64,000 bases of DNA from Ostrea edulis (taxonomy: Eukaryota). This document shows positions 40,501 to 64,000 of this stretch, one piece after another. Below the pieces are notes generated by a model. It saw only the letters and a list, made by a program, of their open reading frames with translations, was not told where the DNA came from and searched no databases. Within the stretch, counting starts at the first letter, position 1. Each line of letters opens with the position of its first letter. A program made the translations under genes and the position numbers. Location of the stretch: assembly GCF_947568905.1 (NCBI RefSeq), contig NC_079169.1:36208001-36272000 (forward strand), read 5' to 3'.

Positions 40501-41728
40501 AGTAAAAATTCTTTCTGTACCTGATATAGGAAAGGAGAAGAGAAAATTTTGGGAATCAAACCTGGGCCCCTGCATTACTAGTCAGCTGGGATCTTTAAAC
40601 ACTGCACATGCATGGAAGAGTTCTAATGTACTCTCATAATCTAATCAATTATAGCAGCTGGGAGGTGCCAGGTACGTAGTGTATCAATATTAATTTAACG
40701 GGTGGCCATTTATCATCTGATGGCTGCCACTTAAATATTCATCTCGCAGCTGCCATGCAATTACATATAGAGACCACCTCCAAATTCACATATGGCAGCC
40801 AGTGCCACTTAATTTATGATTTTATGATACATGTACTTTTTTAAAAAAAATTGCTCACTTCTTTGCTGGTTACAATTTTAGGCAATGCGAAGTCACATTA
40901 GTAAATTCCTTCTTCTAATAACACAATTTTCTGGTTTATAAAAACATGACACATGCTTACTTAGCGTGTTCAAGTGTTAGGAATTCAATCTTGGCAAAAG
41001 AAGCCTGGTATACTACATTGAAAATAGTATGGACAACTTCTATATATGTACATAATTTTAAATGATCAAGAAAAAATTATGGTTTTCTGAGAAGTATCTG
41101 CAGTAGCTAACTTTATATGTCCACTCCAGCATTAAATATTTATTTTTTTACCTCTAATGTGCTAACAATGCACAACGTACAGTATGCAGACAAATTGAAT
41201 AACATGCTTATATTTACACTAAATTTAGATGTGATTTTTTTCCATGTCATTGCAATATCTCTCTCCATGTTCGTCTGAGTCAGCAATGTATATGTAATAT
41301 TGGTTATATTGTACATGTAATATTGTACATGTAACTGTGATGTCAGTTTGTTGAACAATGTAAATTATTGCCTTATAGAAAACTGCACATTTTCTTCTTT
41401 TCTTTGGTAACAAATTCATGTTGGAATGTAAATAGAGGTACATGTAGATGTGTACCGGTATATTATTCTGAAGTAGCATATGACCAACCATCGGCACGTC
41501 ATAGAACATCAGCTTTAAAAGATTTTGCTCATCATACATGTACACGTATTTTTTTGATGTCATTAAATTCAGGTATTCATACATGCTGATTAATATTTAA
41601 GAAAAAGCTAACCCCAACTGCATCATAAGACAAGCTGCTGATCACTCAAGAATGTAATGAAAACAACACTGTTGAACATATCCCAAAGATTTTAATGAAA
41701 TGACAAAATAACAATAAATCATGGTCTC

Positions 41729-41916
41729 TCAGCGCTTCTTTTTAGATTTCTGAGTTTTGAAGTTTCTGCGAGACTGTTTCTGTTTTTGCCTTTGTTTCTG
41801 AAAAGCCTCTTTTCTGGCTTTTAGTTTTCGCTGTTTGAAGATTTCGTCTGGATGCTTCAGCTCTCGTCTGCTTCCCTTCTGATCATTGTTGTCTTTGTTA
41901 CTGACTTTTGTATGCC
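41729..41916 (-). CDS. DDX54: DDX54 terminal exon
   Basis: WHTK...[15 protein letters not shown]...KKR*; ccacag acceptor. Confidence 0.85.
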
Positions 41917-44900
41917 CTGTGGAGAAATCATGATAGCATTTTCTATTGCATAACAATAACATGAATATAAATTGTGCAATAATATTCTTTGATCTCTGCA
42001 CAATACAGAAAGAAGAGAAGAAGAAAAAGAAATATACAAACAGCAATGAACAGTGTGCAAGTAATTTGTTATATTTTACTGTTTCCATCATGTCTGTAAT
42101 GCTGTTTCCTACTTACAATTCCTTTGTCTGGTTCCCGTGACCTTTAATCTGTAGTCTGGTTCCTTCTTCCTGTTGTCAACTTCTTCCTCTTCATCACCAC
42201 TATCATTGGCTGTAGCCATTTTGTTTCTATTCAGCCAGTCCTTGTAAGTAAATATCAGTTAAGGAGGCCAATTCAACATTTACATTGTATTGCAAAATAA
42301 TCTAAAACAAGAGGTACTGTGAGCAATGCTCACTAAGAATACCCCCCGCTTATCCCAATCTCCCAAAGGGTGTTGGTAATAGGTATAAACTACCTCTTTT
42401 CTGAGTGTAAAAAACAAATGGCATGACAAACCGAACCATATTGCTACTTCGATGTCCAGTGCGCTTGACCTTTGACCTTTTGACCCCAAAATCAATAGGG
42501 AACATCTTCATCCCATGGGTAGTCCATATGTATGATATGGTGACTGTAGGTGGAAAGGATAACGCTTTAGAGCCCGGAAACCATATTGCTACTTCGATGT
42601 CCAGTGCACTTGACCTTTGACCTTTTGACCCCAAAATCGATAGGGAACATCTTCATCCCATGGGTAGTCCATATGTATGATATGGTGACGGTAGGTGGAA
42701 AGGATAATGCTTTAGAGTCCGGAAACCATTGCGTCTACAGACGGACGGACGGACGGACAGACGGACAACCCGATTCCAGTATACCCCCCCCACAACTTGT
42801 TGCGGGGGGTATAAAAATGAACAGTTAAATGCAACACAGAATCACATGAAATCATAACTACTGAAATTGTGACGTTGACTACCTCAGAGGTCACTAGGCT
42901 AAAGTACTCTTTTTACATGTATTCTTAAACAGAAAAATCCCCACAATTTCATTAATTTTAACCTTATATTCAGCCTCACATCTAATCTGTCACTATAAAA
43001 AAATATACTGATAAATCCAAAAATTTCTAAATCATCTAATTGAGTCAAAAAATTCCCTAGCTCATGAGATCTTGATTTATACATGGGATTCTAATCCATG
43101 GGCTATGAATATCAAGCACTGCTTAGAAAATTTGGGATTTCTAGCTTTGACTGAATTTTTACCTCATAATTCATTAAAACCTGTTATCAATATGATTTCA
43201 CAATGCATTCATGACCAAGTATTACAATATCAAAACTCAAAAATATTTGTTTCAAATAAACTTATATTCTTCATAAATATTAATGTATATGAAATGGAAC
43301 TAAAGGTCTGCTTATGTTGATATCCTTACAAATAGATTAGATAGGTCTGCATTAGCAAAGCTTAGACTGAGTTCACGCAATTTAGAAATTGAAAGAGGAA
43401 GACATATTGGAGTTGAGCATAATAATAGTATTTGTAAACTGTGCAATAGTAATAACATACAAAATGAAACTCATTGTGCAAATGTTATGAACAAGAAAGA
43501 GAATCCCTAAACAATAAATTATTAATGTTACATAACTTCGATTATAAGCTGATCAATGATGACAATATTAGGTCAAAGTTATTATTGAATTCCAAGTCCT
43601 ATAGTGTATTTAAATGCCTGTCAAAATTTATTGAAGATGTGTCTAATAAAAGAAATTTCCTTCAAGCAACTGACTCCAATATGTTTACATAATTTATCAT
43701 GAGAAAGTCCTATGACTATTCTTAAATATATGTATTATGACTCCATATACTATTCCTATATACAATGTACTTATTATGGTCCCTTTATCTCATGTACACC
43801 TTATATGCAGTGTAATATATCATAATAATATGATTTTGTCTGGTGCCATATTCATGCATTCAAATCACTGATTGTATTTTGAATATTATTGTTTCTATGG
43901 TATAATCTATAATATGTGCCTTTGTGCTTGTGCAAATAAATAATTGGCATTGTCTAATTTAAGGCCACAACACTCACCAGCTTCTTTTTACAAAGAATAT
44001 ACATATACAGTGGAGCCTCGGTAATCCGTACCCCATTAATCCGGACGCTTCACCTTCCGGACGATTTTTCTAGGGAACGGAATTTTTATACATTATTTTG
44101 CATCATTAATCCGGAAATTTGCGTTCCGGATCCGGACGGTCACTTTTTACTACAAAACGTTATAATGCATTGGAAATTGTACCGTTAATCCGGACGGTAA
44201 TTTTGTTTAGGGAAGGTCTGTGTCGGACAATTTTGGCAAGGCGTAAATTATAAAGAAAACAAGTCACACTGTCTAATTGAAGCGATTACCTGTACCCTGT
44301 CAACACCTCCCTCCAATTAGGTGGTGTGTGATGATAAGTCCGTTATATAGCACGTGCCGATTGAGACATTGTATTGCCAATTTTCGCACATAAGATCGTT
44401 ATTGCGTGTAGTATTGAATTTTGTAAATAAATCTGTAGCATATTATTTTATAGTCTTGATCAATAGCCTAATAGTATTAATAAATTAAACATCATGCCGT
44501 AATGATAATTTTTTTAAACTGCTACACATGTCAGTTATACTGATTCGTAAATTGATATCGGCTTATTCAAATCTAAAGAGTGTAGATTATACTTCTAGAT
44601 TCTGGATTTTATACTGTTGATTGGCGTGAAATATACATGTATGTTCATGCACATGTATATGTAGTATAAGGTTTTAACGTTTAGAATGTCACGCATGTAG
44701 AATGTACCTGTGTACGATTGATTCTTGTTACGATGTTGTAGAGCTTTATTGCTTTCAAATTTTTAAACTCTGGGTAGAAGTGAGAAAATTACCATTTTAA
44801 GAAAAATGACAATTAAATTCTGTATGTACCTGTAATGTTAGTTTCACCCGAGTTTTGTTCCGTTATTATCGCATCATGAAAATAATAGGTGCGCGTGACT

Positions 44901-47900
44901 AGATCAAAGCAGTAGTAGGTCTTGATATTACGAGCTTAAATGATTTTTTTCTCCCGATATTGTCTTGGATAATTATAGAATAAGAAATATAAACTCTGGC
45001 AGATTGAATTTTGGTTAAAGAATGTTGTCAACTGACATGATAATCACGGAATTCTTATATCAACTTTGGACGATGAAGAGTGTTTTAACAGACCGCCGAA
45101 CCCGTGAATCGTGACAGATGGAAATTACTGGCCTCTTTAAGAAGTAAAAGTGTGATGAAATGTTTGAAGTGTAAATGATTATGTTAGTTACTAATGATTT
45201 ATTTACTTATAGTTACATAAAGTGCTTCATTATTTGTTTTAGTGCATACGGTACACAGTTTTCTATATTCATTTGTAAGGTTCATATATACGTACAATGT
45301 AAGCACAGGCAAATACACTGAACACGTACATTAACTTTTAGTGCTTTGAAATGCATGTAAATGTTAACATTATCATAATTTTTTTACTAATGCAAATGGT
45401 CAAATCCAATGATAGAATGTGTTTAATTCACTATGCATCAATAAAGTAGGCACATAAGTATTGGTTACTTATGTAAAGATAGAAAATATGCGATTCAATT
45501 ATCCGGACGCTTCATTTATCCGGACGATTTTGCTGGGAACCAAAGTGTCCGGATTAACGAGGCTCCACTGTATTTCAAAAGCTCATTTGAGGTGCATACG
45601 GTTTTCTACAGAATTTCTAACACTTAAAGGGACATGACCATGATTTTTGATTGAGTGCAAATGACAATTTTTTTTGGTTATAGAAATAAAGGTCTTTTAA
45701 TTATAAATCAGTGGATTAAATTTTTTTTTTTTTTTTTTACACAGGATACAATTTGTATTTACATAAAATCCAGCTCCCTAAATCATATTTGCAAACACCA
45801 TGTTAATCTATATCTAGAGTGAGAACACCAACATGATTTCTAAAAACTATGTAAATATTGCATGCAGTATTTAGACATATGTTATTGCTAAATCGATTTA
45901 GGGAGCAAGCAAAAAGAAGCAAGAATGGAAAATCTTCGTCGTAAAAGCTTTTTTCTCTGCAGCCATCAACTTTAGAGCCATGTTAATAGCTGTAAACATA
46001 AATATGACTTGTGGCTTGTTTTAAAAATGAAAAGTTTAGATGTCTCAAATACATCTTTACATCAGTTTTTGAAATTTAGGTTTTTTGCCATTTTACACAA
46101 CTCAAATACTACCAAATTACTGTTAATATCCAAGTATTTTTTCACCAAATATCGTGTCCATGCCCCTTTAATATTTTTGGAACAAATTTGACTAATGTTT
46201 CCAGTTTGGAAATCTTGGCATAAACTGTGATAAAAATGTATGTGCACAAAGTTGAAGGATATGCACGAGATTTATAGGAGGCTGATATCAATGCCCCACT
46301 CTCGGTTCTGATCTTTTTCTTGTTGGCTGCCTGTTCAATAGTGCTGACAAATTTCTTCTTCTTTCTGTCCCTATGAAAATATAAACAAAAATACATGTGT
46401 ATCAATCCTATCAATGATTTATAATAGTGAGCACAGCAAGGAGCCCTGGATTGAACACTTAAGGAGGTACTCTACATCGTCATAATGGCTGACTTCCTTT
46501 TAAAACATGAATATCAGCAATATTTGTCTATCCATTTCAAATAACATTGCCTAGCTGAGTAGGTTAGTATGTCGACCAAAATAAAAGAACAAAAAAGCAT
46601 GTCAACTGCTGAACTGTAGATTGTGGGTTTGAAGCCAGCAGAGGTTTTTTAAATTTTTTATCAGGTTGCTTTCTACTAAAACTGCATTTTTTGCATAAAT
46701 AAAGTGAATTTGAAAGTTTTCAATTTCAAATATTGTTGTACATATCCTCCTCCTTTCATCCATATCAAATTTCTCTGGTGTAGCACTCCTTCTTAAAGAC
46801 CAGGACAGAGAAAATTTTACTAATACATATTCAAAGAATTTTTGATGTCGAGAAAAATCTCCCATATTTCTAACAACCATTCTTTTTCATCTCACAAAAT
46901 CAAATGTTGTTGGCCCATGAATTTTCATGGATTACCTCAATTCTGACCTATGCCTTATGATTCAGTGTGCCTTACTGATTGAGAATGAGTAGGCCTATAA
47001 ATGTATAATAAAATGTAATATTTATAGGTTATAAACTTTGTATGGGAAAATATGATGACCGAGTTTTTTGGCGCGTAGACGGACCGAGCTTGCGAGGTCT
47101 GTCCGCGACAAAAAACGAGGTCGTCATATTTCCCATACAAAGTCTATAACCTTTTTATTATATACTTTCAATTTCATTTAGAAACTAACTATAATTTTAT
47201 TTTTAACAATAACTTTATCGGTTTAACTGAGTAAAAATGAAAAATTTGAAAATTAACGGCGTAGAAATTTGATTGTGACGTAACGTTTGCAGGTCGGAAT
47301 GTTTCCGGGCATATATCGTTTGATATATGCCCGCAAACTTTTAAAGAAAAAAGAAGAGATGAAATTGAAAGTATATAATAAACTATAATTATACATGTAG
47401 CTAGGACAATGGATAACAAGTCACAGCCTATGCTTTGATGTCACAATGCAAATGATGAACTGGAGGATTTAATTGAGGAGATTCTGTTTTCTGCAACAGA
47501 GAATACAAACCTCTGGATTTTCCTCATCTAAAAAGAGCAACTGCTCACATTGTGTTTCATGTTTCAGCTCTTTGGTATGCCTGGTGATGGAAACCCTTTC
47601 ATTCCCTTAGGGTTAATTTTAGCATGCACACACAAAATGGAAATCAACTATGTCAATTTACTTACTATGACAGAGATATATTGTACTTACATCTTTGAAA
47701 ACATGTAACTGTAATGATCTTGATATCAAAGGACTCATGATCAGCTTAATTAATGATAGGCTTCTGAATGGGTCTCAATAGAGGTCATGTCAAGTGCAGT
47801 TGTAAAATATTTAGTGTTATTATATACCCAACAATGTATCGTTCTTTGATACTGTGGATTTCACAGCGTGTGATCTGGTTTAATTCCGGATCAACGCAAC

Positions 47901-50900
47901 GTTATTTGTGGAAAATATTGACCGCGTCACAAACAAAACTGCGTACACAAAACATAATTGTATGGTATGTACAGTATGTGTTTTTTTTTTATAAGTTGGA
48001 TTACATTTATTATCTTATAAATGTGGATTTAAAATGCATAAGGGGGTATATAATAAATTTATCATTACTACAGTAACTTGATCCGAAGAGTTGGATCGCG
48101 TCTCGTTGACAGGCGCGGATCATCAGATCAAACTCGATGCTTCGCGTCTCGTGTGATCTGATGATCCGCTCCTGTCAACTTGACGTGATCTGACTCTTCG
48201 GATCAAGTTACTGTAGTAATAATATATATTTAGTCCCTACTGTACGTTGGATCACCTGGTAAAATTTGCATGTGAGCTATTCCCAGTAAGTCGTTAAACT
48301 AAATCATCTTTTGCACACCAAGCCAATCTAATTAAAATCAGACTTCTTAGATCCACGTCGTATACTCTGCGTAAGAAGATCTGACATAATCCGACTTGGG
48401 GTCATGTTCAATTGAACTTTATGTTGGCCAATCAGCACATCACCAATGATCTCTTCGGTGTTCACAATTCAAGGAAAATGGATGTGATTGTTTGATTTAA
48501 AAGAAAACACATCGCAGCTAGATGTGACATCACAATGTACTGTTTAGTACTTCGACTGGTGTTATATTCCTCGCATTAATTAAGTACACCATCTTGAAAA
48601 CTATTCAAATCGTACCTATCCCTATTCATAAGTAAATCACATTTCACAATTTATTTAATTTGGGTGTATTTTACATAGTACGATTTGTTGTTTGAATGAA
48701 CGAAATATATCAGGCATTATTGCAAAAGTTTAAAATTCTTTATGTGAGAATACACAATTTTATAGTGTGGAGTATACTTCGTGGTAGAGAGATTACTGCA
48801 ACTTATTTACGAATTGCCGGGAACCACCTAAATAACTATCATTGTTTGTATGGCACAATCTGACTGGCTGATAGTTCTTATGAACATTCCAAGCGAAATG
48901 TCATGCGGATGTGATCCCCTATGGGGTTATGTCAGATCCTATTGTAGTGATTGTGAGCTTATCTTAGGATCTGATTTTGATTAGATTGCATACCAACCTA
49001 GACATCTATTAATATTAATCAGATCCAAAAGGGGAATGTCTGGGGGTTGAACAAATTTTTCTTTAGGTGAATCAAGCTTCATATGTTCTAAACATTAATG
49101 CAATAGATATTTTATTATACAGAATTCTTATTTATTCTCAAAATGTCCATTTGCAATAGAATTATGGTTTGAATAACTTGACATTTTGCTTCAACAATGC
49201 AGAAGAGGAATGTGGGTTCTACTGAAGTGGGATATGATTCCCCAATCACATGACCAAAAAAAACCAATCACATTACTTCTTCATGAAATCTTATATATGA
49301 GGTATGATATTAAATCATAGTTACAGAGAAAAGAACTCACAACACAATTTTTTTCTACATGCAAAGAATCAACTAACCATTTGATGTGAGATGTAGCTTT
49401 GGATTTATTTATCTCATCTCGTAAGTCTAAAACTGCACTCGATGCCTCCTTGTCAAAAGAAGTTCCCAGACTCAATCTTAAAAATAACAACAAGGTTACA
49501 TCATTAGGTGATACACAAAATGTAATATAATTCATCCTTCTTGCGGGATTTATAATGATATCACTTTAGTTACCCCTGCTCCGACTGGAAATCCTTGGGA
49601 CGATAGTGCAGGTAATTTTCTTCATCTCTGACACTCTCCGATTTACGTTTCTTTTTTCTTTTTGGATCAAATACTTTGCTATTGGCCTTCCTCTTTCCTC
49701 CAATTACAGTCCGGAATGTTTCCTGTTTCAATTTAGAATATCTATGAAAGAAGAGGCCCATGGCCACATCGCTCACCTTAGTCACTTTGGCCCATATCTA
49801 AAGATTTTACATACATATTTGCATGTAAAACTTTGGTCCCTTTTGTGACCTGAACCTACCCCCGGGGGGCCATGATTTTTACAAACTTGAATCTGCAATA
49901 TGTCAGGAAGCTTTCATGTAAATGTAAACTTTTCTGACCCAGTGATTCTTCAGAAGATTTTTAATGATTTTCCCTATATATTTGTTTGTTAAACTTTGAT
50001 CCCCTATTGTGGCTGCATTGTACTCCCCGTGGCCATGAATTTAACAAACTTGAATTTGCATAATGTCAGGACACTTTCATGTAAATTTCTACTTTCCTGG
50101 CCCAGTGGTTCTTGAGAAGAAGATTTCTAAAGAATTTCCCTATTTAGAGTTAATTCTCTTATTGTGGCTCCATCCTACCCCCGGGGGGCCATAATTTTTA
50201 CAAACTTAAATCTTCACTATGTCAAGAAGCTTTCGTGAAAATGTAAACTTTTCTGGCCCAGTGATTCTACTTGAATCTGCACTATGTCGGGAAGCTTTCA
50301 GGTCAATTTCAGCTCCTCTGGCCCAGTGATTCTTGAGAAGATTTTTAAAAAACCGCACCCTATTTTTGCATTTTTGTGATTATCTCCCCTTTGAAGGGGC
50401 ATGGTCCTTCATTTGAACAACCTTGAAAGCCCTTCACCCAAGGATGTTTTGTGCCAAGTTTGGTTGAAATTGGCCTAGTGGTTCTGGAGAAGATGAAAAT
50501 GTGAAAAGTTTACGCTGACGACAGACAACAGAGAAATTTTGATCAGAAAAGCTCACCTGAGCCTTCAGCTCAGGTGAGCTAAAAACGTGCAGCGCTGAAT
50601 TTCGTTCAAATGGCTATAACTCTTCTAAAAACTGGGAAAACCATGATAAAAATCCAATTTGTTTGGAAGTTGTTTATGATGAAGCTACACAGCAAGTGTC
50701 ATATCTTAATGTCCTAGAGCATGACCAAAATGTGCAGAAATTGAATTTTATGCAACAGGCCATGACTCTTGTAAAGCGGGGTCCATCATCACAGAAGTTA
50801 ACCTTGATCTGTATGGTTGTTTGTCAGAAAGGTATACAGCAAGTTTCTTATCAATACTTCAAAGCATGACTGAAACAAAAGGCCCATGGGCCACAATACT

Positions 50901-53900
50901 CACCTACCCTTTCTCCAAAGTTCATATTTCAAAAAAAGGAAGATTTTCAAATATTTCCCCATACACTCTCATGTGAAACTTTGAATCCATGTGGCCAAAC
51001 CCAACCCCAGGGCATTGATTTGAAGAAACTTGAATCAGCACTACTTAGCGATACTAGTGACTATAATATGACTAATCCTGGCCCTGCTGCTCATGAGAGT
51101 AAGATTTATAAAAAATTATCTTTCTGTAAAACGTTGATCCCTTGTTGAAGCTTCAGATTACAAAACACACCTGTAGATTACACTACACACCTGTAGATTA
51201 CAATACACACTTGTAGATTACACTACACACCTGTAGATTACACTACACACCTGTAGATTACACAACACACCTGTAGATTACACAACACACCTGTAGATTA
51301 CACAACACACATGTAGATTACACTACACACCTGTAGATTACACTACACACCTGGACGCTGTTTCATCAATAAGTGTAAATTTTCAACTAACTAAGTCTTA
51401 CGCCGACTACGTAAATCTAGTTACGTACAATCTTAGTTTAGCGCAAACCGTGTTTCACGAAACGACGTAAATACATGCGTACGTTACTACTCGACTAACT
51501 TTTCAACTAAGCTTACGTGCTTAGTTACCGCGCCCTGAGCATGCGTACATCATACTTTCGGTTTTTTTCACTTGTCGTCTGGACGAAAATAATGAATGAA
51601 AAGAACGCAAAAAAAAAAATACACAAGCGGAATTGGGAGGAGACAGAGATGGCCGTGTTGGCAGAGGCAGTAAAATTTTCCTATACCATACTATTTGGGC
51701 ACTGCATACTAAATCAAACATATCACTCCATAAACAAAATTTGTTTTTATGTATATAGGCCTATGTATATATTTTACATCTCTTCTTCTTCAAAAAGTAG
51801 TTGTTTTATGATTTCAAAGGTTATTATATTTTAAGTGCATGTAGGTCGACACGATACATGTACATCTACATTGTATATAGATATTAACTATATATTTATA
51901 CTTTAATTGGATAATTAATGTAGACTCGTGGGCCTAAATGTGTTTGAACAAATTGAAGATATGTGCATATTTTACAGTTTGGGATTATATACAGGCACGT
52001 ACCATCGTTTTGCAAAGTGACGGGAGGGGGGGGGGGGGGGGGGGGGGGGGACTGGGACATAGATTAGATGTTGGCCTGGGACATAGATTAGATGTTGGCT
52101 TTTGAAATAATCTTTTTATCCTGCGTTATAACGCAAAAAATAAAAAAAATAAATAAAATGTTTTGTCCTATCTGCAAAATCCTAATTCGGAGGGGTGGGG
52201 GGTGGGGGTGACGGGGGTGGGGGTGGGGGATGGAGTGGGTGGTGTTGGAATCTTTTGCAGTGATTTCCACAATTTTTTCTCTCTCAGGTTTCATTTTCTT
52301 CAATCGTTGGGGTGCTAGAGTCTTCTATTATGAGTGCATCAAAACATTTTCCTTGACAAAGTACAAAATTTTAAAAAATCGTATTGTTAAAAAAAGTGGA
52401 GTAGAAATGCAAGGTGACCCCCTCCCATTCACGCCGATTAGTGCCTAATATACATGTGCATGTCGATGTTTTTCTTTGTTTGATAACATAAAATATATAT
52501 CTGCACGGATTATCCTGCACATCACTTATTACCGAAATTCGTCAAGTATCAAACTGTTACGAAGACTTTTTTTTTTAATTTGGAAGAACTTTATTATCAT
52601 AATATAGTTATATGATGTATCTCTTAAGACGGGATATTTTTTCAAGATTTAAAATATACAATGGAAAATAGTAGATCTTAAAGTAACTGTTCATAAAATA
52701 TACATTACACTCCCATAAATCCACCCACCATACGATTGAGATCGAATTGAATCGGGCTCGCTAATCATTTGTTCCAAGTAAGTCAGAGCGGAAGTTTTGA
52801 AGAGATTTATAAATAGCTTACATATAATACAACAAAGTGAATGTTCCCTATACGGTGGACTACTTTACAAAGGGATTTGGGAATAACACTGTGCGTTCAT
52901 CATTCGTGTACAGATAGACACTTGTGAAAGTAATCATACAGTAAAGGCAAGCCATAAATTTACTAGTTTTCAAAGGGAAGTAACCCTTATGGCCTTACAT
53001 ATTTATCGTTGTAAATGTCTAAAAGCATCCTGTCTTGAAAAAATCGATCACGACGCAAAGCTCGTCGGTAAAAATTCCACATATATTTACAAACAGCTAA
53101 CAGTTGGCCATGATTTTTGCTTACGTAGATACTTGCGTAAGGGTTCGACCTGACGTAGTGTTTCTACTAGTTAGTAGAAAACTTGTGTAAATTCCAATCT
53201 TACGCCACTTGATGAAACGGACTTGCGTAAAATATTTAGTCTAGTCAGAAAGTTACGCCAAACTAAGCTTACACAACTAGTTACGATGTTTGATGAAACA
53301 GCGTCCTGTAGATTACAATACACACCTGTAGATTACACAACACACCTGTAGATTACACAACACACCTGTAGATTACACTACACACCTGTAGATTACACTA
53401 CACACCTGTAGATTACACTAAACACCTGTAGATTACACAACACACATGTAGATTACACTACACACCTGTAGATTACACAACACTCCTGTAGATTACAATA
53501 CACACATGTAGATTACACTAAACACCTGTAGATTACACTAAACACACCTGTAGATTACACTACGCACCTGTAGATTACACTACGCACCTGTAGATTACAC
53601 AACACACATGTAGATTACACAACACACATGTAGATTACTCTACACACCTGTAGATTACACTAAACACCTGTAGATTACACAACACACCTGTAGATTACAC
53701 TACACACCTGTAGATTACACAACACACCTGTAGATTACATTACACACCTGTAGATTACACTACACACCTGTAGATTACACAACACACCTGTAGATTACAC
53801 TACACACTTGTAGATTACACTACACACATGTAGATTACACTACACACCTGTAGATTACACTACACACCTGTAGATTACACTACACACATGTAGATTACAC

Positions 53901-56900
53901 TAAACACCTGTAGAATACTCTACACACCTGTAGATTACACAACACACCTGTAGATTACACAACACACCTGTAGATTACATTACACACCTGTAGATTACAC
54001 TACACACCTGTAGATTACACAACACACCTGTAGATTACACTAAACACCTGTAGATTACACTACACACCTGTAGATTACACTACACACCTGTAGATTACAC
54101 AACACACCTGTAGATTACACAACACACCTGTAGATTACAATACACACATGTAGATTACACTAAACACCTGTAGATTACACTAAACACACCTGTAGATTAC
54201 ACTACGCACCTGTAGATTACACTACGCACCTGTAGATTACACAACACACATGTAGATTACACAACACACATGTAGATTACTCTACACACCTGTAGATTAC
54301 ACTAAACACCTGTAGATTACACAACACACCTGTAGATTACACTAAACACCTGTAGATTACACAACACACCTGTAGATTACATTACACACCTGTAGATTAC
54401 ACTACACACCTGTAGATTACACAACACACCTGTAGATTACACTACACACTTGTAGATTACACTACACACCTGTAGATTACACTACACACCTGTAGATTAC
54501 ACTACACACCTGTAGATTACACTACACACATGTAGATTACACTAAACACCTGTAGAATACTCTACACACCTGTAGATTACACAACACACCTGTAGATTAC
54601 ACAACACACCTGTAGATTACATTACACACCTGTAGATTACACTACACACCTGTAGATTACACAACACACCTGTAGATTACACTAAACACCTGTAGATTAC
54701 ACTACACACCTGTAGATTACACTACACACCTGTAGATTACACAACACACCTGTAGATTACACAACACACCTGCAGATTACACAACACACCTGCAGATTAC
54801 ACAACACACCTGTAGATTACACTACACACCTGTAGATTACACTACATACCTGTAAATTGTCCTCGTCTGCCATCTGTTGCTCTGTATTCTCCCTATCACT
54901 GTCGTCTGCTTCTGCCTCCTTAGATTCTGACGTCTGCTCTATTCTTCTGTGGATGACTGTCTGATGGAAGGCTCTCTTCTGTTTCATTACATCAAAGCTC
55001 TTGTTCTTAGATGAGGTGTTGGTCTCAAAAATTGTCTAAAATTCACAGTTTTTTATTTATGGGTGAGATAAATTAAATTGTTTATCTATTTGGCTTCACT
55101 CACTATCATTTGTATATACAATGTACACAATTTTCCTTGCACTTATCAAATTGAAAATCTCAGTCAAAGACATATATATACATACAAGTATAAATAAATG
55201 TAGAATATTTGATTTGAAATTGATATTATTTGCTAGTACAGAATACGTATCCAAACTAGTAACCACTGACATCCATTTCTAATCTCATCTAAATTAAAAC
55301 TGGGTTGCTCAAAACCTTGGTTAAATTTGACCACTGGTTAAATTTACTATCCACTGAATAACTAACCGCTGGTCAAATTTCTGTTGCTCAAAGTAAATTT
55401 AGCCCTAGGGCTTACTAATCAATGATTACGTACATTTAAACCTTTGGTTAAGCTTAACCAAGGTTTTGAGCAACCCAATCCAGACTTCTATTTATGTGAT
55501 AGTGTAAATAGATGTCTAATCCCCTTTTTACTTTGCAGAGCAATCAGTTCCACGTAGTAGAAAGGTTAAATGCCCATATCTCCTAATTGTATAAAACAAA
55601 TACCGAGTCCATTGATTAGATAGTCTGTTTGTGAAAATTACATTTTAATGAATGAATCAGAGCTTAAGGTAACTGATTCATTTTAATTTTCTGTTAAGTT
55701 TTTTTTAACAATTTCTAATGAAAAAATATTATATTTTTATAAGTAACGAAATGGTATTTAATTTGGAATGTTCCGATTCACATCCTGAAACTTGGTATCT
55801 GTAAACATCCCTGTATTTCTCAATCCCAACACTTAATGAGAGTCTAGAAAATGTTTAAAAATTATATTTCTCATTCCTGACACTCAATGACAGTGTAGAA
55901 TATGTTTAAACCCATAATTCCAGGACTCATTGACAGTATAGAAAATGTTTAGAATCGTATTTCTGAATCCCAGCACTCAACAAGAGGTACTGTGAGCAAT
56001 GCTCACTAAGAATACCCCCCGCTTACCCCAATCTCCCAAAGGGTGTTGGTAATAGGTAAAACTTCAGTATTATGATCCAAAAGGTATCTAGGAACACAGC
56101 ATCTCCATGCGATGAAAAAAGCCATTAAAGAATTTAAATGGAAACCATATTGCTACTTCGATGTCCAGTGCGCTTGACCTTTGACCTTTTGACCCCAAAA
56201 TCGATAGGGAACATCTTCATCCCATGGCTAGTCCATATGTATGATATGGTGACTGTAGGTGGAAAGGATAACGCTTTAGAGCCCGGAAACCATATTGCTA
56301 CTTCGATGTCCAGTGCGCTTGACCTTTGGACCCCAAAATCGATAGGGAACATCTTCATCCCATGGATAGTCCATATATATGATATGGTGACGGTAGGTGG
56401 AAAGGATAATGCTTTAGAGCCCGGAAAACATTGCGTCTACAGACGGATGGATGGACGGACGGACGGACAGACAGACGGACAACCCGATTCCAGTATACCC
56501 CCCCACAACTTGTTGGGGGGGGGGGGGGGGGGGGGGGGGGGGAGAGGTATAATGACAGTGTTACAGTAGAAAATGTTTAGAATCGTATTTCTGAATCGCA
56601 GAACTCACTGTATGTCCTTTGTATGATTTGAGAGCATTCAGGAGATCATTCCTGTGCTGTTCCTCTTCACCAAACTCAGACGCTACAAAGTCATTCAAGA
56701 TGTTTAATAGATAGCAGCTGTCAATTTACCTAATAAATCAATTTCAATTAAACCAAGCTCTACTGTCTTGTAAATGGTTAAATTTATGATTAGGGCTGTT
56801 CCAGAAATGATCAAATGGGGGGGTCGGGCGGCAAATGATATTTTTTTGTGTGGGTGGTCGTATTTTTTCATATTTTAATTGGTCCGTGGTTGGACTGTTA

Positions 56901-59900
56901 AAAAAATATTTATTATGGGTAGTGGGTAGTTTCTATTGTTTTATTTTGTGCCACGTGGGTGTTGAGTTTTCAGAATATTTTTATTGTCGCTCTTGTTGTG
57001 TTGGTTACAAAACGTCGGAGGGAAAATTGAAAACGTGCTTTCGAAATGCTGCTTTCGAAATCGGAAATCGGAAGTAACATAGAACTATTCGAGTTGTCGC
57101 TCTTTGCAGCGCATAACTTTCCATTACGGCACTCTTCAAATTAGAGGCGCGTTTAGTAGGGTCCCTTTGGACGTGATGGCGGCGAACTCTGTTCTGTAGA
57201 TTATTACAGTTTACAGTGCATCGATTTTGGGAATATTTTGAAACCAATAGGTATTCCGTTTTCTAATAAAAATAGGCAAACCTTAGTTGATTTATACGAG
57301 GGTACCGATGCGTTATATTTATCAGTCGGTGTGATGGTGATATAGAGGCCTCCGGGCGCGGGCTCCATTAGAAGACGAACGATTCGTGGAAAAACATATC
57401 CATACCTATTTCATGATAATAGCATCGTTTGGACTCCCAATCTTTCCAACATTCCCGCCATAGAATCCTTTGATTGTTGATGTGACATCGTTTCTTCAGA
57501 ACTACTGTGATACAATGTCGCACAGGCATTACCGTGTCATTGACTAGAATGTTTGTCCCGAAAACCTCGCGAGATTTGTACTGTTTTCATTTTTAAAAAT
57601 ATTTTTGTGGTGGGTCTGGTTAGTTTTTTTTTTTTTTTTAGATGGGTCATTGTAAAATGAGTTTATTAATTTGATGGGTCATGGGGTAATTTTTTATATT
57701 TTTTTATGGGTGCTTGGTATATACAAAAGGTGCCTCCCGACCCCCCCATGTATTTATTTCTGGAATAGCCCTTAACAAAAATCCAAATTTGTGAACATTT
57801 CTACATTTTCTATAAAGGATATATACTTTTATTAACCATATAATTTTTGCTTCCTGAACAAAAAAAAATTATTGCAATCCATGTATTCTTCTAAATATCT
57901 TTTGTTCAATGCACTAAATATGCACCACAATCATTATTTTGAGTAACTATCTCATTTTTATGGTAATTTCTAAATGTTACCTTAAAATCTAGAAAGGTTT
58001 AGATAGTTGGGAAATTATCCGTTGAAGTCATCAGTGATAACTACATAAATACAGTGCTACAGTGAACAAATGCACAACACACACATACATCGCACAGTGA
58101 ACAAACGCACAACACACACATACATAACACAGCGAACAAACGCACAGCACACACATACATCGCACAGTGAACAAACGCACAGCACACACATACATTGCAC
58201 AGTGAACAAACGCACAGCACACACATATATCGCACAGTGAACAAACGCACAGCACACACATACATCGCACAGTGAACAAACGCACAGCACACACAAACAT
58301 AACACAGGTAACAAACTCACAGCACACACATACATAGCACAGTAAACAAACGCACAACACACACATACATAACACAGTGAACAAACGCACAACACACACA
58401 TACATAACACAGTAAACAAACGCACAGCGCACACATACATCGCACAGTAAACAAACGCACAACACACACATACATAGCACAGTAAACAAATGCACAGCAC
58501 ACACATACATCGCACAGTGAACAAATGCACAGCACACACATACATAGCACATCGAACAAACGCACAACACACACATACATAACACAACGAACAAATGCAC
58601 AGCACACACATACATAGCACATCGAACAAACACACACATACATAACACAACGAACAAATGCACAGCACACACATACATAGCACAGTGAACAAACGCACAG
58701 CACACACATACATCGCACAGTGAACAAATGCACAGCACACATGAACAAAGCACGTTCTTTCAGATATGAAGTGGTTGGTCAGTAACTTAAGCTACTAGTA
58801 TTTACCAAACATAGGATGCATTCCCATGGGAGAGGACTGAAGAATATCCTTGTATCGTTTAATTGACTCCTTTGCTGGAAGGGGGCGTGACCGTAGGTAT
58901 TTCTTCAAGGCATTTCCAACCACTTTCTTCATATTCACCTGAATATATGTCACTCACATGACTTATAACGTTTTACAATCTAGCATAATGCTTGCATGTT
59001 AAACATACAGTATCTTCATTTTCACTCACACAAAGTAAATTTTGGAGGTTTCAATCAAAGCACAACTGAATTTGAGTGGTACGATTACAATTTGTCATTT
59101 CACTGTCTCACCAGATCGATGTGGTCTTTGTGCCAAAGCCTAAGTTGATCCTCTGCTTCATCAATTACTGACTGCGGAACATCTCCCATCACTCCATCGC
59201 TATCTGAAATATCACGCATTTCATTGATGATTAAGAAAAGAAGAGAGAGAGAGTGTGTGTGTGTGTGTGTGAACAATTTCTGACAAAACACACATTAAAA
59301 TTTGAATGTACATATGTGGTGAAATCAAAATCAGATTCTACTTGCTCTAACCTGTTAAGTTTTTATGAGGTGTTGCTAAATTGAGAGATCTTCCTAAAAA
59401 GATGTACAAGTCCAAAAGGTAAGGTACTTCATCATGAGCCACTAGAGAAAAAGCATATCCCTCCCTTCCTGCTCGGGCCACTCGACCTGTGGGGACAGGA
59501 TTTCAAGGTCATAAATACAGCAAAGTAACTTTTGATCAAATGAATTTTTTTTTAATCAAGCAAAGAAATCACGGCAGCAATACTGACCCACTCTATGAAC
59601 AAAGAGCTTGGACTTAGCGGGAAAGTTCATATTAATGACGTTATCCAGTAGCGGTATGTCAATGCCTCGAGCTGCAAGGTCAGTCACAATAAGAACCTTG
59701 ACCTTTTTATGCTGGAATTTGGCAATATTGATTTTACGGGCCGCAGGATCTAACGAGCTGTAGATATAAGTGGATTCTATTCCTGCGTAGGACAAAATCT
59801 GAAATATTACATGCATAGGGTGTTTAGAATATAACATGTGCATCACTTCAGAATGAGAGATACAAAAATCGTAATTGAAAGCACAAAGAAATTGAAACCT

Positions 59901-61680
59901 TGCAAAAGAAAAAAAAAATTCAAACCATATTTAAGTATTCCACATGATGTTTGGTTGCAGCAAATACAACAGATTGATGATCTGGATCAATGAGTTCTTT
60001 GAGTATGTATAACAATATGGCTGGTTTGTCATCTTCACGGCAGCGAAAGAATGATTGCTGCAATTTTTTCAAAAACACAATTTCAATAACATGTAGTATT
60101 TCCATATGTCCCTATTATTAACAAATTCAAATTCAGAATCTCACTCTGAGAGTAATTTTTTATAATAAATCATTAAAACTGCTGAAAAGATGAATGAAAC
60201 ACCTTGAGTTGTTCGCTGAGTTTAGTCTCCACATCCAGTCGGATTAGTGTGGGATCATGAAGCCCTGCCTTAGCAAATTCCACCAAGAGTCGGGGCAGTG
60301 TAGCCGAAAAGAGCACTGTCTGTCTGGATTCTGGAAGTCGATGGATAATCTCGTTCAGCTGTTCCTGAAAACCCATCTCAAACAACCTGGGTAAACAACA
60401 TACATAGCCTGACCATTCTGTGTTCCATATTATCTTACAAATAATTCCATACCAGTGGCCTGATATACAAAAAATCTTACGACTATGATTAAGATTTAGA
60501 AACATTTCTTTATCATTCATCTTTTGCTGAGTTTTTTAACAATCACAAACAGCATATTCATGGCTGATAAAACTAGCATAAGATCTTGTGACATTCTTTT
60601 CATTTCATCATCAACGTAAGATTTTTTCTCAAAAGGGCCGAAGTATTACAAATCAAACGTAATACCTGTCCGCCTCATCAAAGACTACATATTCTACAGA
60701 CTTCAGCTTTTTTTCCATCTCCATCAAAACATGCAACAGACGTCCGGGCGTGGCTATCACTCTGAAACAGGACTGAAGTATGAATCTCTGCTCAACAATT
60801 ATTATTTACGATTACATGTACAATCATGCATTCATACAATAATGCCAAGTACATGATATTAATTTTCTTCATAACTTACATGTCAGGATTTTCGTGAAAT
60901 GCAGCAAATTGGTCATCCATCCTGTAGTGAAAATTTCAAATTCATAAACTCTTTCCAATTAAAAAATATGCGAGTTTAATATACTGTAGATATTCCAACT
61001 ATAATTGAATTTCCCTGACGGACACTGACAATGTGTACGTACTTATCTCCTCCTAGCACCACGGCAGCCATCAGTCCTGTGTATTTCCCAAGCTGTAACG
61101 CAAGGAACATAACAAAATTATTTCATGATATATAATATATACTGTAAACCAACTGTTATTTGACATTTTCGCAAGGTTTACGAATATTACTCAACATGAA
61201 CCAGTCCTTTAATGTCTCTCATATTTGTTTAAAGATAATCTCAGTCGCGAAAATTAGTACCATAAAGTAGTTTATCACTGATAAATAGCGAAAAAAAGTC
61301 GTCGCAAATAAAATGTTGGATTATACAATGCACATTATACATGGCTGTTATGGAGGAAGCAGCAATTTAAATCAATTCATAACATTCCAACCTTTTGTCT
61401 TTTAAATGTCTTGTGAATAATAATTAAAAGTCGTACATCTTGCTATACAGGTATGAGAGAATGCTTTGAATATTTATAAAATGAATGGCACCTCTTTGGT
61501 GAACTTGAGAGTTTGTAAAGCTAATTCCCTTGTTGGGGATAAGATGAGGCCCCTTGCTCCGGACTTTGCCATGTGAGTTTTGAGTTTTTCAAACATTGGA
61601 ATGAGGAATGCTGCAGTTTTTCCACTTCCTGTCCTTGCCATGGCAACCACATCTTTCCCCTCCATAATTAAAGGAACAGT
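41729..61680 (-). CDS. DDX54: DEAD-box RNA helicase DDX54 (DBP10), last 17 coding exons; 5' exon(s) not found in window
   Basis: Exons 61680-61492, 61092-61043, 60921-60880, 60761-60666, 60386-60203, 60057-59926, 59798-59588, 59486-59352, 59203-59112, 58938-58806, 56682-56609, 55035-54850, 49722-49574, 49476-49378, 46370-46263, 42247-42117 and 41916-41729 (2199 nt, phases consistent). Motifs [49 protein letters not shown] and the DBP10-type WDRKKKKFV. Confidence 0.95.
42117..42247 (-). CDS. DDX54: DDX54 exon following the U12 intron
   Basis: YKDWLNRNK...DSGDEEEE; AC acceptor, gtaagt donor. Confidence 0.85.
42306..42813. mobile_element. HINE-like element with internal tandem units
   Basis: aacaagaggtactgtgagcaatgctcac start, two ~145-bp units, (ACGG)n, terminal atacccccc...ggggggtat hairpin; same family as 55979-56552. 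Confidence 0.8.
43080..43690 (+). mobile_element. Decayed LINE 3' fragment
   Basis: [37 protein letters not shown] and ICKLC relics. Confidence 0.75.
44008..45570. mobile_element. Non-autonomous Tc1/mariner-pogo-type DNA element
   Basis: CAGTGGAGCCTCGGTAATCCG / CGGATTAACGAGGCTCCACTG TIRs, TA flanks, subterminal atccggac repeats, no long ORF. Confidence 0.88.
45628..46167. mobile_element. Kolobok-like MITE
   Basis: TTAA|agggacatgaccatgat ... atcgtgtccatgcccct|TTAA. Confidence 0.65.
46263..46370 (-). CDS. DDX54: DDX54 exon preceding the U12 intron
   Basis: (W)DRKKKKFV...[17 protein letters not shown]. Confidence 0.9.
47026..47152. repeat. Foldback element
   Basis: aggttataaactttgtatgggaaaatatgatgacc / ggtcgtcatatttcccatacaaagtctataacct around a GC-rich centre. 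Confidence 0.8.
48064..48220. repeat. Foldback element
   Basis: attactacagtaacttgatccgaagag...ctcttcggatcaagttactgtagtaat; inner arms ttgacagg.gcggatcatcagatca / tgatctgatgatccgctcctgtcaa. Confidence 0.85.
49378..49722 (-). CDS. DDX54: DDX54 exons 49722-49574 and 49476-49378
   Basis: [19 protein letters not shown]|[18 protein letters not shown]. Confidence 0.88.
49751..50584. mobile_element. HINE-like element with ~165-bp satellite-like internal units
   Basis: aagaggcccatggccacatcgctcacct start; repeated ttgaatctgcactatgtcaggaagctttcatgtaaa units; terminal hairpin agctcacctgagccttcagctcaggtgagct. Confidence 0.85.
51155..54852. repeat. 20-bp minisatellite (~87 units) split by a Harbinger element
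   Basis: acacacctgtagattacac(a/t) units at 51155-51352 and 53307-54852. Confidence 0.97.
51354..53305. mobile_element. PIF/Harbinger internal-deletion derivative
   Basis: GACGCTGTTTCATCAA / TTGATGAAACAGCGTC TIRs with CTG duplicated on both sides. Myb/SANT-like start MNEK...[25 protein letters not shown] (+, 51592-51699). Nuclease-like start [21 protein letters not shown] (-, ~53000-53070). Confidence 0.85.
54850..55035 (-). CDS. DDX54: DDX54 exon
   Basis: [24 protein letters not shown]...DNLQ; donor gtatgt. Confidence 0.9.
55301..55477. mobile_element. Short MITE
   Basis: Perfect TIR tgggttgctcaaaaccttggttaa / ttaaccaaggttttgagcaaccca; TSD not clear. Confidence 0.7.
55979..56552. mobile_element. 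HINE-like element, second copy
   Basis: Highly similar to 42306-42813; inserted at AA within a degenerate ~50-bp repeat (cagcactc|aa...aa|tgacagtg). Confidence 0.82.
56609..56682 (-). CDS. DDX54: DDX54 exon
   Basis: [24 protein letters not shown]; gtgagt donor. Confidence 0.88.
56793..57771. mobile_element. PIF/Harbinger-type non-autonomous element
   Basis: GGGCTGTTCCAGAAAT / ATTTCTGGAATAGCCC, with TTA on both sides. Confidence 0.85.
58050..58745. repeat. 35-bp CA-rich minisatellite
   Basis: cacagtgaacaaacgcacagcacacacatacatcg units. Confidence 0.95.
58806..61680 (-). CDS. DDX54: DDX54 helicase-core exon cluster (10 exons)
   Basis: All DEAD-box motifs from I to VI in order, with GT-AG junctions. 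Confidence 0.96.
60457..60638. mobile_element. Small degenerate MITE in a DDX54 intron
   Basis: ggcc...aaaaaatcttacg / cgtaagatttttt...ggcc inverted ends. Confidence 0.5.
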
Positions 61681-64000
61681 CTGCAAGCAATAAATGAGGA
61701 TTAAACATCAATGCATAGAATTTACATACAAATAATGATGAGGTCTACAGGCCGAAATGGCTAGACACTTGATTTCTAAAAAGATTAAATTATAATTATA
61801 AGTGTTCCATATTCTTGTCAAAAATAAGAGTATGCAAAATTCTTATTCTTGGGATGAGTGTGCCAAATTTTTTTTCAAATTGTGAGTGTAACTTGTTCTT
61901 CAAAGAGTTTATGCTTACAATATGGGAAACTTAACATTCAAGAAGTCTGACGGAGAAAGTGCTGTTTTTAAACATATTAAAATGATGACATGCTGCTGAT
62001 GGATAACAAAGATAGGCTGACATCCTAATATCAATGTACAATACTGAATTCATGATCAGTGGTAACGTCTTCTGAAAGGTTAAAGACAATTTATTTGGAT
62101 GACCTTGATCTTGTTTGGACTGTCTTACTTTGCTTGTTTATTGGTCCATGGAAGAAAAGTCAAACAAGATCAACACTCGTGCTGCAAAATACGCCCATCC
62201 AATACATTCAGTAATAGTGTACAGAACCATTCTTTAGTGAAAAAATGGCTATGACAATGTTGTTTTGAAAATTCTTCTAATTTCAGAGAGTATTAATCAA
62301 ACATTAGTTCTAAGATGGTTTTGTTAGATGAAAAATTTGTTTGATTTCTCTGTCAAAATTTCGTTCGGAGTTCATCTGCACTAAACACCACGCGAGGCTA
62401 CTTTTCTCTGGAATGTGTCTTCCCCGTTCTAATTTTAGCGCTATTTATAGAACAGGATTTTCCACACAAGCATTATATATAACGAAATGCATTTGTTTGA
62501 TTTTTGTTTTTCATTGCTATCAAAAATTAGCACAACTAAAGATATGAATAAAATACAAATTAATTTAAAGAAACAACATACATAGGCGATGACGTGGCAG
62601 AATAGTCAATTTGATGACGTAGACCACTTACTGGTAGAAGTAGACAGATTACACAAGTTCCCGGTATGAATCGTCTGCTTTACGAGATCGATAACATGAC
62701 TGAGCAAGTGGCGACTTCTGATCTGGTAAATATCAATGAAATTGAACTGCGTTATATGGGGCTCAGTCAACGAGTGCGTTTTAAACGTTTTCCTCGATAT
62801 TGAAATGGAGCCGAATTGCATTCCACCGTTTCAACGACATAACCAGTGTTCAACGTCTCCTCCAACACGATGCAGCATAAATCCAGTCACCACTTGTTAT
62901 CTTCCTTTATATTTAATTCAGCTTTTAACCATTGCACCTTTAATTTGGCGTATAATCCATTTAAATCTGCACAGTAACTGTTCCTGACCTGAACGCACAG
63001 CCATGCCGTTTTGTTTTTGTTTTCATTCTTGCCTATATGTATTCCTACGCGCCATTTCAGAAACGTTAATTCAAGCTTTTTGATGGGAGAAACTATTTGT
63101 TTTTCTATCTTAAAAACATAATTAAATGATAAGAAATAAAACTTATAATTCTTTGTTTGATGCATGTATCAAACGAAACATTGGACGGAAAACTTTTTCA
63201 TCAATGCGCTATTATAAGTTTCATTTCTTAATTGAAGGAAATTTCACTCTAATAAATTAGAACTTAAACTGAGATGCAAAATCATCACTTTTTAAAATAT
63301 ACTTGGCACAAACACTACTAGGATCAAGTATGCCATGTTTCATGATCCTAACCTAGTTTTTCCTTCATGATTGCCCATGAAAATAACACCAATGGGAAAC
63401 ATGTGTACCAGCTATCCTAGCCTTAATAGTACTATTGTTATCCTTCCCACAAGGTATTGATGGATGAACAGACAGAGACACAGAAACACTGTACCTTAAT
63501 ACAACCTCTCCATGATGGTTGAATGTATCAAGTTTGAGTATCCTAGCCTTACAAGTACTGTTTTCATCTTGTTTTGTGCATTCATTATTACCCTTGTCAG
63601 TTTGATTTTGACCTTGAAAATCAATAGGCTTCTTCATCTATTCATTGAAAGCAAACGTTTCAAGTCTGATGATCCTAGTTGTTTCATTCCTCTATTAATT
63701 CAGAACATGTGTACCAAGTTTGAGGATCCTAGCCTTATAAATTTACAGTTGTTATCAGACTCACATGGTGCAGACATATGTGCACACATTGCATCAATAT
63801 ACCATTATATGACCAATCTAATGACTAAATTTAAAAATAGTTCCACACCTTCACACTACACAGAATTTTACCTTCCTCTGTATGGGGGTTGGTATTTTGT
63901 ATCCTTTTCTCATAACACCTTTGTAAACTGAATGTGAAAGACCTGAAAAAAGAATTACAACAAAGAGTAAAGAATGTGATATGCTATCAAAATCTGTTTA

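What the first reader, a model, noticed from the sequence alone, without database searches (positions are those of the whole stretch)
42248..46262. U12-type AT-AC intron in DDX54
Seen: no GT donor fits this junction, whereas ATATCCTTC, a TCCTTAAC branch site 8 nt upstream of the terminal AC, and the AC acceptor join the exons in frame. Established: these are the minor-spliceosome consensus signals, and such introns are rare and often rate-limiting. GT-AG-only gene predictors would mis-model the C-terminus. Whether the position is shared with vertebrate DDX54 needs checking.
Basis: partly seen in the sequence, partly recalled or inferred. Interest (0 to 1): 0.7.

Follow-up and report, generated by a model that had tools for sequence, protein, structure and literature searches.

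The report
Confirmed AT-AC minor intron in oyster DDX54
The second-to-last intron of this oyster's DDX54 RNA-helicase gene is a genuine minor-spliceosome (U12-type) AT-AC intron that transcripts really use, but it is almost certainly the same intron already catalogued in mouse and human DDX54, so it is a correct and ordinary finding.

Summary
**Observation: confirmed.** On the minus strand, exon 46370..46263 ends ..CGTGC. The 4,015-nt intron (46262..42248) starts ATATCCTTC. It has TCCTTAAC at 42265..42258, then 8 nt, then the terminal AC. Exon 42247..42117 follows in frame.

**Interpretation: supported.**
- Spliced contigs from two runs join 46263 to 42247 exactly. The same contigs also cross the next, ordinary GT-AG intron.
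- Both flanking exons are single-copy in the 895 Mb genome (probably Ostrea edulis).
- The genome encodes U11, U12, U4atac and U6atac.

- Human DDX54 aligns without gaps across the junction, which splits the codon aligned with human Leu767 in phase 2.
- The published mouse and human DDX54 minor-intron donors (TCT|GTATCCTGA, CCT|GTATCCTGA) fit that codon.
- Genomic contigs from other eukaryotes carry a U12 donor at this exact position. It is the AT-AC subtype in 13 loci (186–195 nt in close relatives, 5.8 kb in one distant lineage). It is the GT-AG subtype in three lineages.
- One lineage lacks it and has a U2-type intron 7 nt downstream.

**Correction.** "No GT donor fits" is too strong. Nine weak GT/GC-AG pairs are in frame, but none keeps the conserved residues and none is seen in RNA.

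**Novelty.** Low. DDX54 is a catalogued minor-intron gene, and molluscs are rich in minor introns.

The parts
46263..46370 (-). Upstream exon (108 nt), encoding DRKKKKF..SASYKSR plus 2 nt of an Ala codon; part of the DBP10CT domain
   Evidence: Pfam DBP10CT 2.9e-11. Aligns to human DDX54 residues 733-768. Covered by spliced contigs at 46263-46371. Single copy in the genome.
46254..46262 (-). U12-type 5' splice site ATATCCTTC (AT subtype)
   Evidence: ATATCCTT is invariant in 13 orthologous loci while codon third positions in the exon vary.
42248..46262 (-). AT-AC minor (U12-type) intron, 4,015 nt, phase 2
   Evidence: Joint 42247->46263, 'skips 4015, GT..AT' on the + strand, in X1 (depth 121) and X2 (depth 170), with 109 letters on the shorter side.
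42258..42266 (-). Branch-point sequence CTCCTTAAC; the likely branch A at 42259 lies 11 nt from the last intron base
   Evidence: unique in the window. Complementary to GUAAGGAA in this genome's own U12 snRNA. Relatives have TTCCTTGAC or TTTCCTTAAC, at identical spacing in the close relatives and 1 nt nearer in L024.
42248..42249 (-). Terminal AC of the intron
   Evidence: joint. The one-letter ambiguity ('both=1') would give CA..TA termini, so AT..AC is the sensible reading.
42117..42247 (-). Downstream exon (131 nt), encoding (A)[22 protein letters not shown]..
   Evidence: Contigs cover 42116-42247. Single copy in the genome. Orthologous exon found in relatives.
41917..42116 (-). Last intron, ordinary GT-AG, 200 nt (internal control)
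   Evidence: Joint 41915->42116 (CT..AC with the cut moved by 1) in X1 and X2, and in the true RNA-seq run X4.
41675..41916 (-). Last exon, with stop codon at 41734..41732 and a short 3' UTR
   Evidence: sequence. Contigs from X1-X4 end at 41675-41683. Similar to the last exon of L023.
42306..42809 (.). Young high-copy dispersed repeat inside the intron, with an internal 145-nt tandem duplication
   Evidence: At least 40 copies at 96-98% identity on all chromosomes, out of 1,116 candidates. A second copy lies at 55979-56522. Tandem repeat result. It explains the depth peak.
59559..63997 (-). DDX54 helicase-core exons (motifs Q, I, Ia, Ib, II, III, V); the gene start lies beyond the window end
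   Evidence: Motif scan. Pfam DEAD at 1.2e-18, 9.8e-08 and 4.4e-06, and Helicase_C at 9.6e-16.

Best explanation
This is the second-to-last intron of the oyster orthologue of DDX54/Dbp10, a nucleolar DEAD-box helicase needed for 60S ribosome assembly. It is a U12-type intron of the AT-AC subtype. By inference from the established mechanism, U11 snRNA pairs with the donor ATATCCTT, U12 snRNA pairs with CTCCTTAAC and bulges a branch adenosine 11 nt from the 3' end, U6atac then replaces U11, and the exons are joined at GC|T. What is shown here is that transcripts use exactly these sites and that the genome has the machinery. The intron is old. The same codon position carries a U12-type intron in close relatives (AT-AC, about 190 nt), in several more distant eukaryotic lineages (AT-AC or GT-AG subtype), and most probably in mouse and human DDX54 (GT-AG subtype). 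Only the splice signals are conserved. In this genome the interior has grown to 4 kb, partly through a young dispersed repeat.
For: The motifs sit at the exact coordinates. The RNA joint 46263|42247 appears in two runs, in contigs that also splice the neighbouring GT-AG intron; unique intron bins have depth 0-3 against 121-170 for the exons. The exons are single-copy, so no retrocopy exists in this genome. U12 scores 127 bits, U6atac 94, U11 93 and U4atac 83, all above the Rfam cut-offs. U12 contains GUAAGGAAAA, U11 starts AAAAGGGCC, and U6atac contains AAGGAGAGA. Gene identity rests. For conservation, 12 relatives' loci hold complete AT-AC introns of 186-195 nt with TGC|ATATCCTT, TTCCTTGAC and 8 nt + AC. 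L024 is AT-AC and 5,809 nt. L020, L021 and L022 have GT-subtype donors at the same codon and phase. Human SYKRDLY aligns without gaps to SYKSRAY. The published human and mouse donors CCT|GTATCCTGA and TCT|GTATCCTGA fit Asp766 + Leu767 (CT|N) (PMC6717393). DDX54 is listed as a U12-intron gene in PMC1874599 and PMC8848931.
Against: X1 and X2 are labelled RNA only as a guess and carry another organism code, with 3 mismatches in 109 nt. The true RNA-seq runs X3 and X4 are too small to cover this joint. Dependence on the minor spliceosome was not tested. The first branch-site position is C rather than the consensus T. The vertebrate position rests on 3 exonic bases plus a protein alignment, not on an annotated vertebrate gene structure. 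The taxa of the comparison contigs are not named.
Confidence: 0.95

Rival explanations
1. It is an AT-AC intron removed by the major (U2-type) spliceosome, a rare class that shares the termini but not the internal signals.
For: The AT-AC termini alone do not prove U12 dependence.
Against: Both U12 hallmarks are present: donor ATATCCTT, and TCCTTAAC 10 nt from the 3' end. Both are conserved across lineages while the rest of the intron is not. Other lineages have the GTATCCTT subtype at the same position, which is typical of U12 introns.
Confidence: 0.02
2. The joined contigs come from DNA (a processed retrocopy or a mis-assembly), not from spliced RNA.
For: X1 and X2 are 'RNA?' by guess, and their organism code differs from that of the DNA holders.
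Against: Each exon has exactly one place in the genome. Unique intron bins have near-zero depth while exons reach 121-170. Two introns are removed precisely at their splice sites, and a 1,923-nt contig continues into further exons. Run X4, a declared RNA-seq library, shows the neighbouring joint.
Confidence: 0.01
3. The main mRNA uses a nearby weak GC-AG or GT-AG pair, such as GC 46264 with AG 42241, and the AT-AC joint is a minor isoform.
For: Nine such pairs are in frame and stop-free. Contigs cannot show isoform proportions.
Against: Among the joints listed (10 more were not shown), only the AT-AC joint links these two exons, and both runs show it. The alternatives delete or replace the residues A-Y-K, which align with L-Y-Q in human DDX54 and are kept in relatives. 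Their donors (GCATAT, GTGCAT) are poor.
Confidence: 0.02

Closest known systems
The catalogued minor intron of mouse Ddx54 and human DDX54 (U12DB; MIDB, PMC6717393; PMC8848931; PMC1874599)
   Same: Same gene family and the same C-terminal DBP10CT region. The same codon position and phase as far as could be tested: the codon aligned with human Leu767, phase 2. Near-consensus branch site in both (CTTCCTTAACG in mammals, CTCCTTAAC here).
   Different: The mammalian intron is the GT-AG subtype (GTATCCTGA) and is 328-510 nt long. The oyster intron is the AT-AC subtype (ATATCCTTC) and is 4,015 nt long.
Classical AT-AC U12-type introns (Hall & Padgett 1994; Tarn & Steitz 1996, as cited in PMC10639083)
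   Same: ATATCCTT donor, TCCTTAAC branch site close to the 3' end, terminal AC, no requirement for a polypyrimidine tract, and a phase other than 0.
   Different: Nothing of substance. The first branch-site position is C instead of T.
U2-type AT-AC introns
   Same: The terminal dinucleotides.
   Different: They lack the ATATCCTT donor and the TCCTTAAC branch site, both of which are present and conserved here.

Membership tests
U12-type (minor) intron, AT-AC subtype | 5' splice site matches [AG]TATCCTT directly at the exon boundary | tested here: met
   ATATCCTTC at 46262..46254; invariant in orthologous loci.
U12-type (minor) intron, AT-AC subtype | Branch-point sequence TTCCTTRAY about 10-15 nt from the 3' splice site | tested here: met
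   CTCCTTAAC at 42266..42258, with the branch A 11 nt from the last intron base. Spacing is identical in the close relatives and 1 nt shorter in L024.
U12-type (minor) intron, AT-AC subtype | Terminal dinucleotides AT and AC, used in RNA | tested here: met
   Joint 42247->46263 with ends GT..AT on the + strand, in two runs.
U12-type (minor) intron, AT-AC subtype | The genome encodes the minor-spliceosome snRNAs with matching recognition sequences | tested here: met
   U12, U6atac, U11 and U4atac all score above the Rfam cut-offs. The recognition boxes were read.
U12-type (minor) intron, AT-AC subtype | Splicing depends on U11/U12/U4atac/U6atac | not testable with these tools
   Needs snRNA knock-down or an in vitro splicing assay.
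U12-type (minor) intron, AT-AC subtype | A formal classifier score (intronIC or a position-weight matrix) above threshold | not tested
   intronIC is not available here; only consensus matching was done.
DDX54/Dbp10 DEAD-box helicase | DEAD-box helicase core with motifs Q, I, Ia, Ib, II, III, V | tested here: met
   Motifs found in minus-strand exons at 63997-59559; Pfam DEAD and Helicase_C.
DDX54/Dbp10 DEAD-box helicase | C-terminal DBP10CT (NUC160) domain | tested here: met
   PF08147 at 2.9e-11 and 43.9 bits against a cut-off of 27. The best PDB matches are human DDX54 and yeast Dbp10.
Orthologue of the vertebrate DDX54 minor intron | Same codon position and phase in aligned proteins | tested here: inconclusive
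   An ungapped alignment places the junction in the codon aligned with human Leu767. The published exon ends CCT| and TCT| fit Asp-Leu in phase 2, with a chance fit of about 1 in 16. Other lineages with ..L|YP.. or ..M|YP.. read-through show the GT subtype at this position. No annotated vertebrate exon table was available.

The most novel reading that the evidence does not exclude
This intron position may record a full life history of a minor intron: an ancient U12 intron that has switched between AT-AC and GT-AG subtypes in different lineages. In one lineage (L023, probably also P0021) it would have been replaced by a U2-type intron shifted 7 nt downstream, either by intron sliding or by conversion through cryptic sites, rather than by simple loss followed by independent gain at an AAG|G proto-splice site.
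Probability: 0.12. Interest if true: 0.4.

Novelty: new member of a known kind. Interest (0 to 1): 0.15.

Why it matters
It matters mainly for annotation. A predictor limited to GT-AG or GC-AG would either truncate the C-terminus or choose a weak pair that drops conserved residues of the DBP10CT domain. Biologically, it adds an oyster case to a minor intron already catalogued in mammalian DDX54. It also shows that the position is shared widely while the subtype and length vary (186 nt to 5.8 kb). It opens no new question, because minor introns are expected in molluscs (PMC10639083).

Tried and rejected
**Leads that gave nothing**
- The Rfam scan of 41000-48000 found no snoRNA or other curated RNA in the intron. 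It gave only sub-threshold miRNA-model hits on a palindrome at 47026-47152 and at 45279-45337.
- The depth peak at 42288-42681 first looked like a possible intronic RNA. It is a high-copy dispersed repeat.
- The downstream exon alone has no Pfam hit and no PDB hit.
- The interiors of the relatives' short introns share nothing with this intron beyond the 8-nt donor.
- The supplements of PMC8848931 and PMC11347168 are not held. In PMC6865273, the 'ancient' flag for DDX54 refers to the age of the gene, not of the intron.

- The joined two-exon model was not sent to any search tool. All searches were exon by exon, by reference. The join was translated only in a local frame check.
- The large representative-protein search was not used, because the protein's identity was not in doubt.
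- No contig taken for human was fetched. None of the 69 hits carries the human residue string. The only human information used is the PDB chain alignment and the published MIDB table.
- The N run at 1916-2048 was not touched.
Full report
**1. The observation**

Reading the minus strand, an exon that begins after ..TTTTCATAG at 46370 ends ..TCTCGTGC at 46263. The next bases are ATATCCTTC (46262..46254).

About 4 kb downstream lies GGCCTCCTTAAC TGATATTT AC | TTACAAGGACTGG:
- TCCTTAAC occupies 42265..42258.
- Eight bases follow it.
- The terminal AC is at 42249..42248.
- The next exon starts at 42247 and ends at 42117, before GTAAGT.

The join is in frame in phase 2 (GC|T, Ala).

The motifs are rare. 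TCCTTAAC occurs once on both strands of the window, and ATATCCTT occurs four times in 128 kb. From the base composition (36% G+C), finding both by chance at one exon pair has a probability of about 5e-9.

Of 36 nearby GT/GC-AG combinations, 9 are in frame and stop-free. An example is GC at 46264 with AG at 42241, giving ..SYKSR|DWL... All nine have poor donors and remove or replace conserved residues.

**2. The gene**

- The upstream exon matches Pfam DBP10CT (2.9e-11).
- Its best solved-structure matches are human DDX54 (8fkt chain NI, residues 733-768) and yeast Dbp10.
- Minus-strand exons between 63997 and 59559 carry DEAD-box motifs Q, I, Ia, Ib, II, III and V. They match Pfam DEAD and Helicase_C.
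- The stop codon is at 41734..41732.
- The gene therefore runs from beyond the window's end down to about 41675, and the AT-AC intron is the second-to-last intron.

**3. Transcripts use the junction**

The RNA-type runs held 6-14% of the sampled words, which is what exons alone would give. I laid four of them on 41500-47400.
- A 561-nt contig (X1, depth 121) and a 1,923-nt contig (X2, depth 170) both join 42247 to 46263.
- They skip exactly 4,015 nt whose ends read GT..AT on the + strand, which is AT..AC on the gene strand. The shorter side of the joint has 109 letters.
- The one-letter ambiguity would give CA..TA ends, so AT-AC is the sensible reading.
- The same contigs also remove the 200-nt GT-AG intron 42116..41917. 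A declared RNA-seq run (X4) shows that second joint too.
- Unique parts of the intron have depth 0-3.

Each flanking exon has a single place in the genome, so there is no processed copy in this assembly. The caveats are that X1 and X2 are RNA only by the tool's guess and bear another organism code (97% identity here), and that contigs cannot give isoform ratios.

**4. The machinery**

The genome (894,786,893 bases) has full-length matches above the Rfam cut-offs:

| snRNA | bits |
|---|---|
| U12 | 127 |
| U6atac | 94 |
| U11 | 93 |
| U4atac | 83 |

- U12 contains GUAAGGAAAA, which is complementary to UCCUUAAC with one A bulged.
- U11 begins AAAAGGGCC.
- U6atac, read on its own strand, contains AAGGAGAGA.
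- The pairing scheme itself is established knowledge and was not tested here.

That identification is an inference.

**5. Conservation**

A U12 donor in phase 2 translates as x-Y-P. I therefore searched with the stop-free stretch that covers the exon plus the read-through, and then with the alignment of the hits.

Many open frames called on genomic contigs read ..SYK-x-x-x-Y-P and then diverge. The DNA shows the following:

| Loci | Donor and subtype | Intron length | Branch site and 3' end |
|---|---|---|---|
| 12 loci from close relatives | TGC\|ATATCCTT, AT-AC | 186-195 nt | TTCCTTGAC, then 8 nt + AC |
| L009 | AT-type donor | contig ends inside the intron | not reached |
| L024 (more distant) | AT-AC | 5,809 nt | TTTCCTTAAC |
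| L020, L021 | ..AT\|GTATCCTT and ..CT\|GTATCCTT, GT-AG | about 1.0-1.2 kb | near-consensus branch sites, AG ends |
| L022 | ..AT\|GTATCCTC, GT-AG | about 0.6 kb | weaker branch site |

All of these introns sit at the same codon position and phase. The organisms behind these contigs are not named.

Intron interiors are not conserved. Part of this genome's extra length is a young repeat with at least 40 copies at 96-98% identity.

**6. Vertebrates**

- DDX54 is listed as a U12-intron gene in human (PMC1874599) and mouse (PMC8848931).
- MIDB tables (PMC6717393) give the human intron as 510 nt with donor CCT|GTATCCTGA and branch site GCTTCCTTAACG.
- They give the mouse intron as 328 nt with donor TCT|GTATCCTGA.
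- Human ..SSSYKRDLY (to residue 768) aligns without gaps to ..SASYKSRAY. The oyster junction therefore falls in the codon aligned with Leu767.
- The exon ends CCT| and TCT| are what Asp (GAC/GAT) followed by Leu (CT|N) in phase 2 requires.
- The chance fit is about 1 in 16, so this is good but not final evidence.
- The GT-subtype lineages in section 5 make it more credible.

I put orthology at about 0.85. The mammalian intron is the GT-AG subtype, so the subtype differs between oysters and mammals. Subtype differences at one position are also seen among the lineages in section 5.

**7. Verdict**

It is an ordinary, correctly recognised minor intron in a gene already catalogued as containing one. 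Molluscs are reported to be relatively rich in minor introns (PMC10639083). Interest is low. Its practical value is for gene annotation.

- The joined exon model was never sent to a search tool. Only a local frame check translated it.
- Read laying received 5,901 letters.
- No contig taken for human was fetched.
- The N run was left alone.

Noticed in passing
L023:216-1000 (ENA ERZ4903317); also protein P0021: This is a DDX54 orthologue with no U12 donor at this position. The sequence runs on as GC C TAC AAG|GTATGT, so a U2-type phase-0 intron of about 275 nt lies 7 nt downstream, and the protein reads ..SYKSDAYK|AWLRKSK... It is either loss plus gain at an AAG|G proto-splice site, or a shifted conversion. 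The organism is unknown.
   Followed up: partly
window 42306-42809 and 55979-56522: A dispersed repeat of about 500 nt, with at least 40 copies at 96-98% identity on all ten chromosomes (1,116 candidates). The copy in the AT-AC intron has a 145-nt internal tandem duplication (42434-42729). It is heavily represented in the RNA-type runs.
   Followed up: partly
window 46425-46818: Extremely high contig depth (up to about 16,800 in X1), with many broken joints and loose ends. This is another abundant repeat, in the intron upstream of the DBP10CT exon.
   Followed up: no
window 47026-47152: A palindromic stretch that hits the Rfam mir-3913 model equally on both strands (about 40 bits against a gathering score of 100). 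It is probably an inverted-repeat element rather than a miRNA.
   Followed up: no
window 58034-58791: Long open frames made of a repeated [13 protein letters not shown]-like unit, in three frames of the minus strand. This is a minisatellite inside a DDX54 intron, separate from the one earlier notes place at 51155-54860.
   Followed up: no
proteins P0009-P0012: Copies of the relatives' open frame in which many residues look like the result of C-to-T changes (RAYP becomes RVYF). They are probably assemblies of bisulfite-converted reads, not real variants.
   Followed up: no
L007-L019, L024 versus window 42248-46262: The length of this one orthologous minor intron ranges from 186 nt to 5,809 nt, while the donor, the branch site and the branch-to-3' spacing stay fixed or within 1 nt.
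   Followed up: yes
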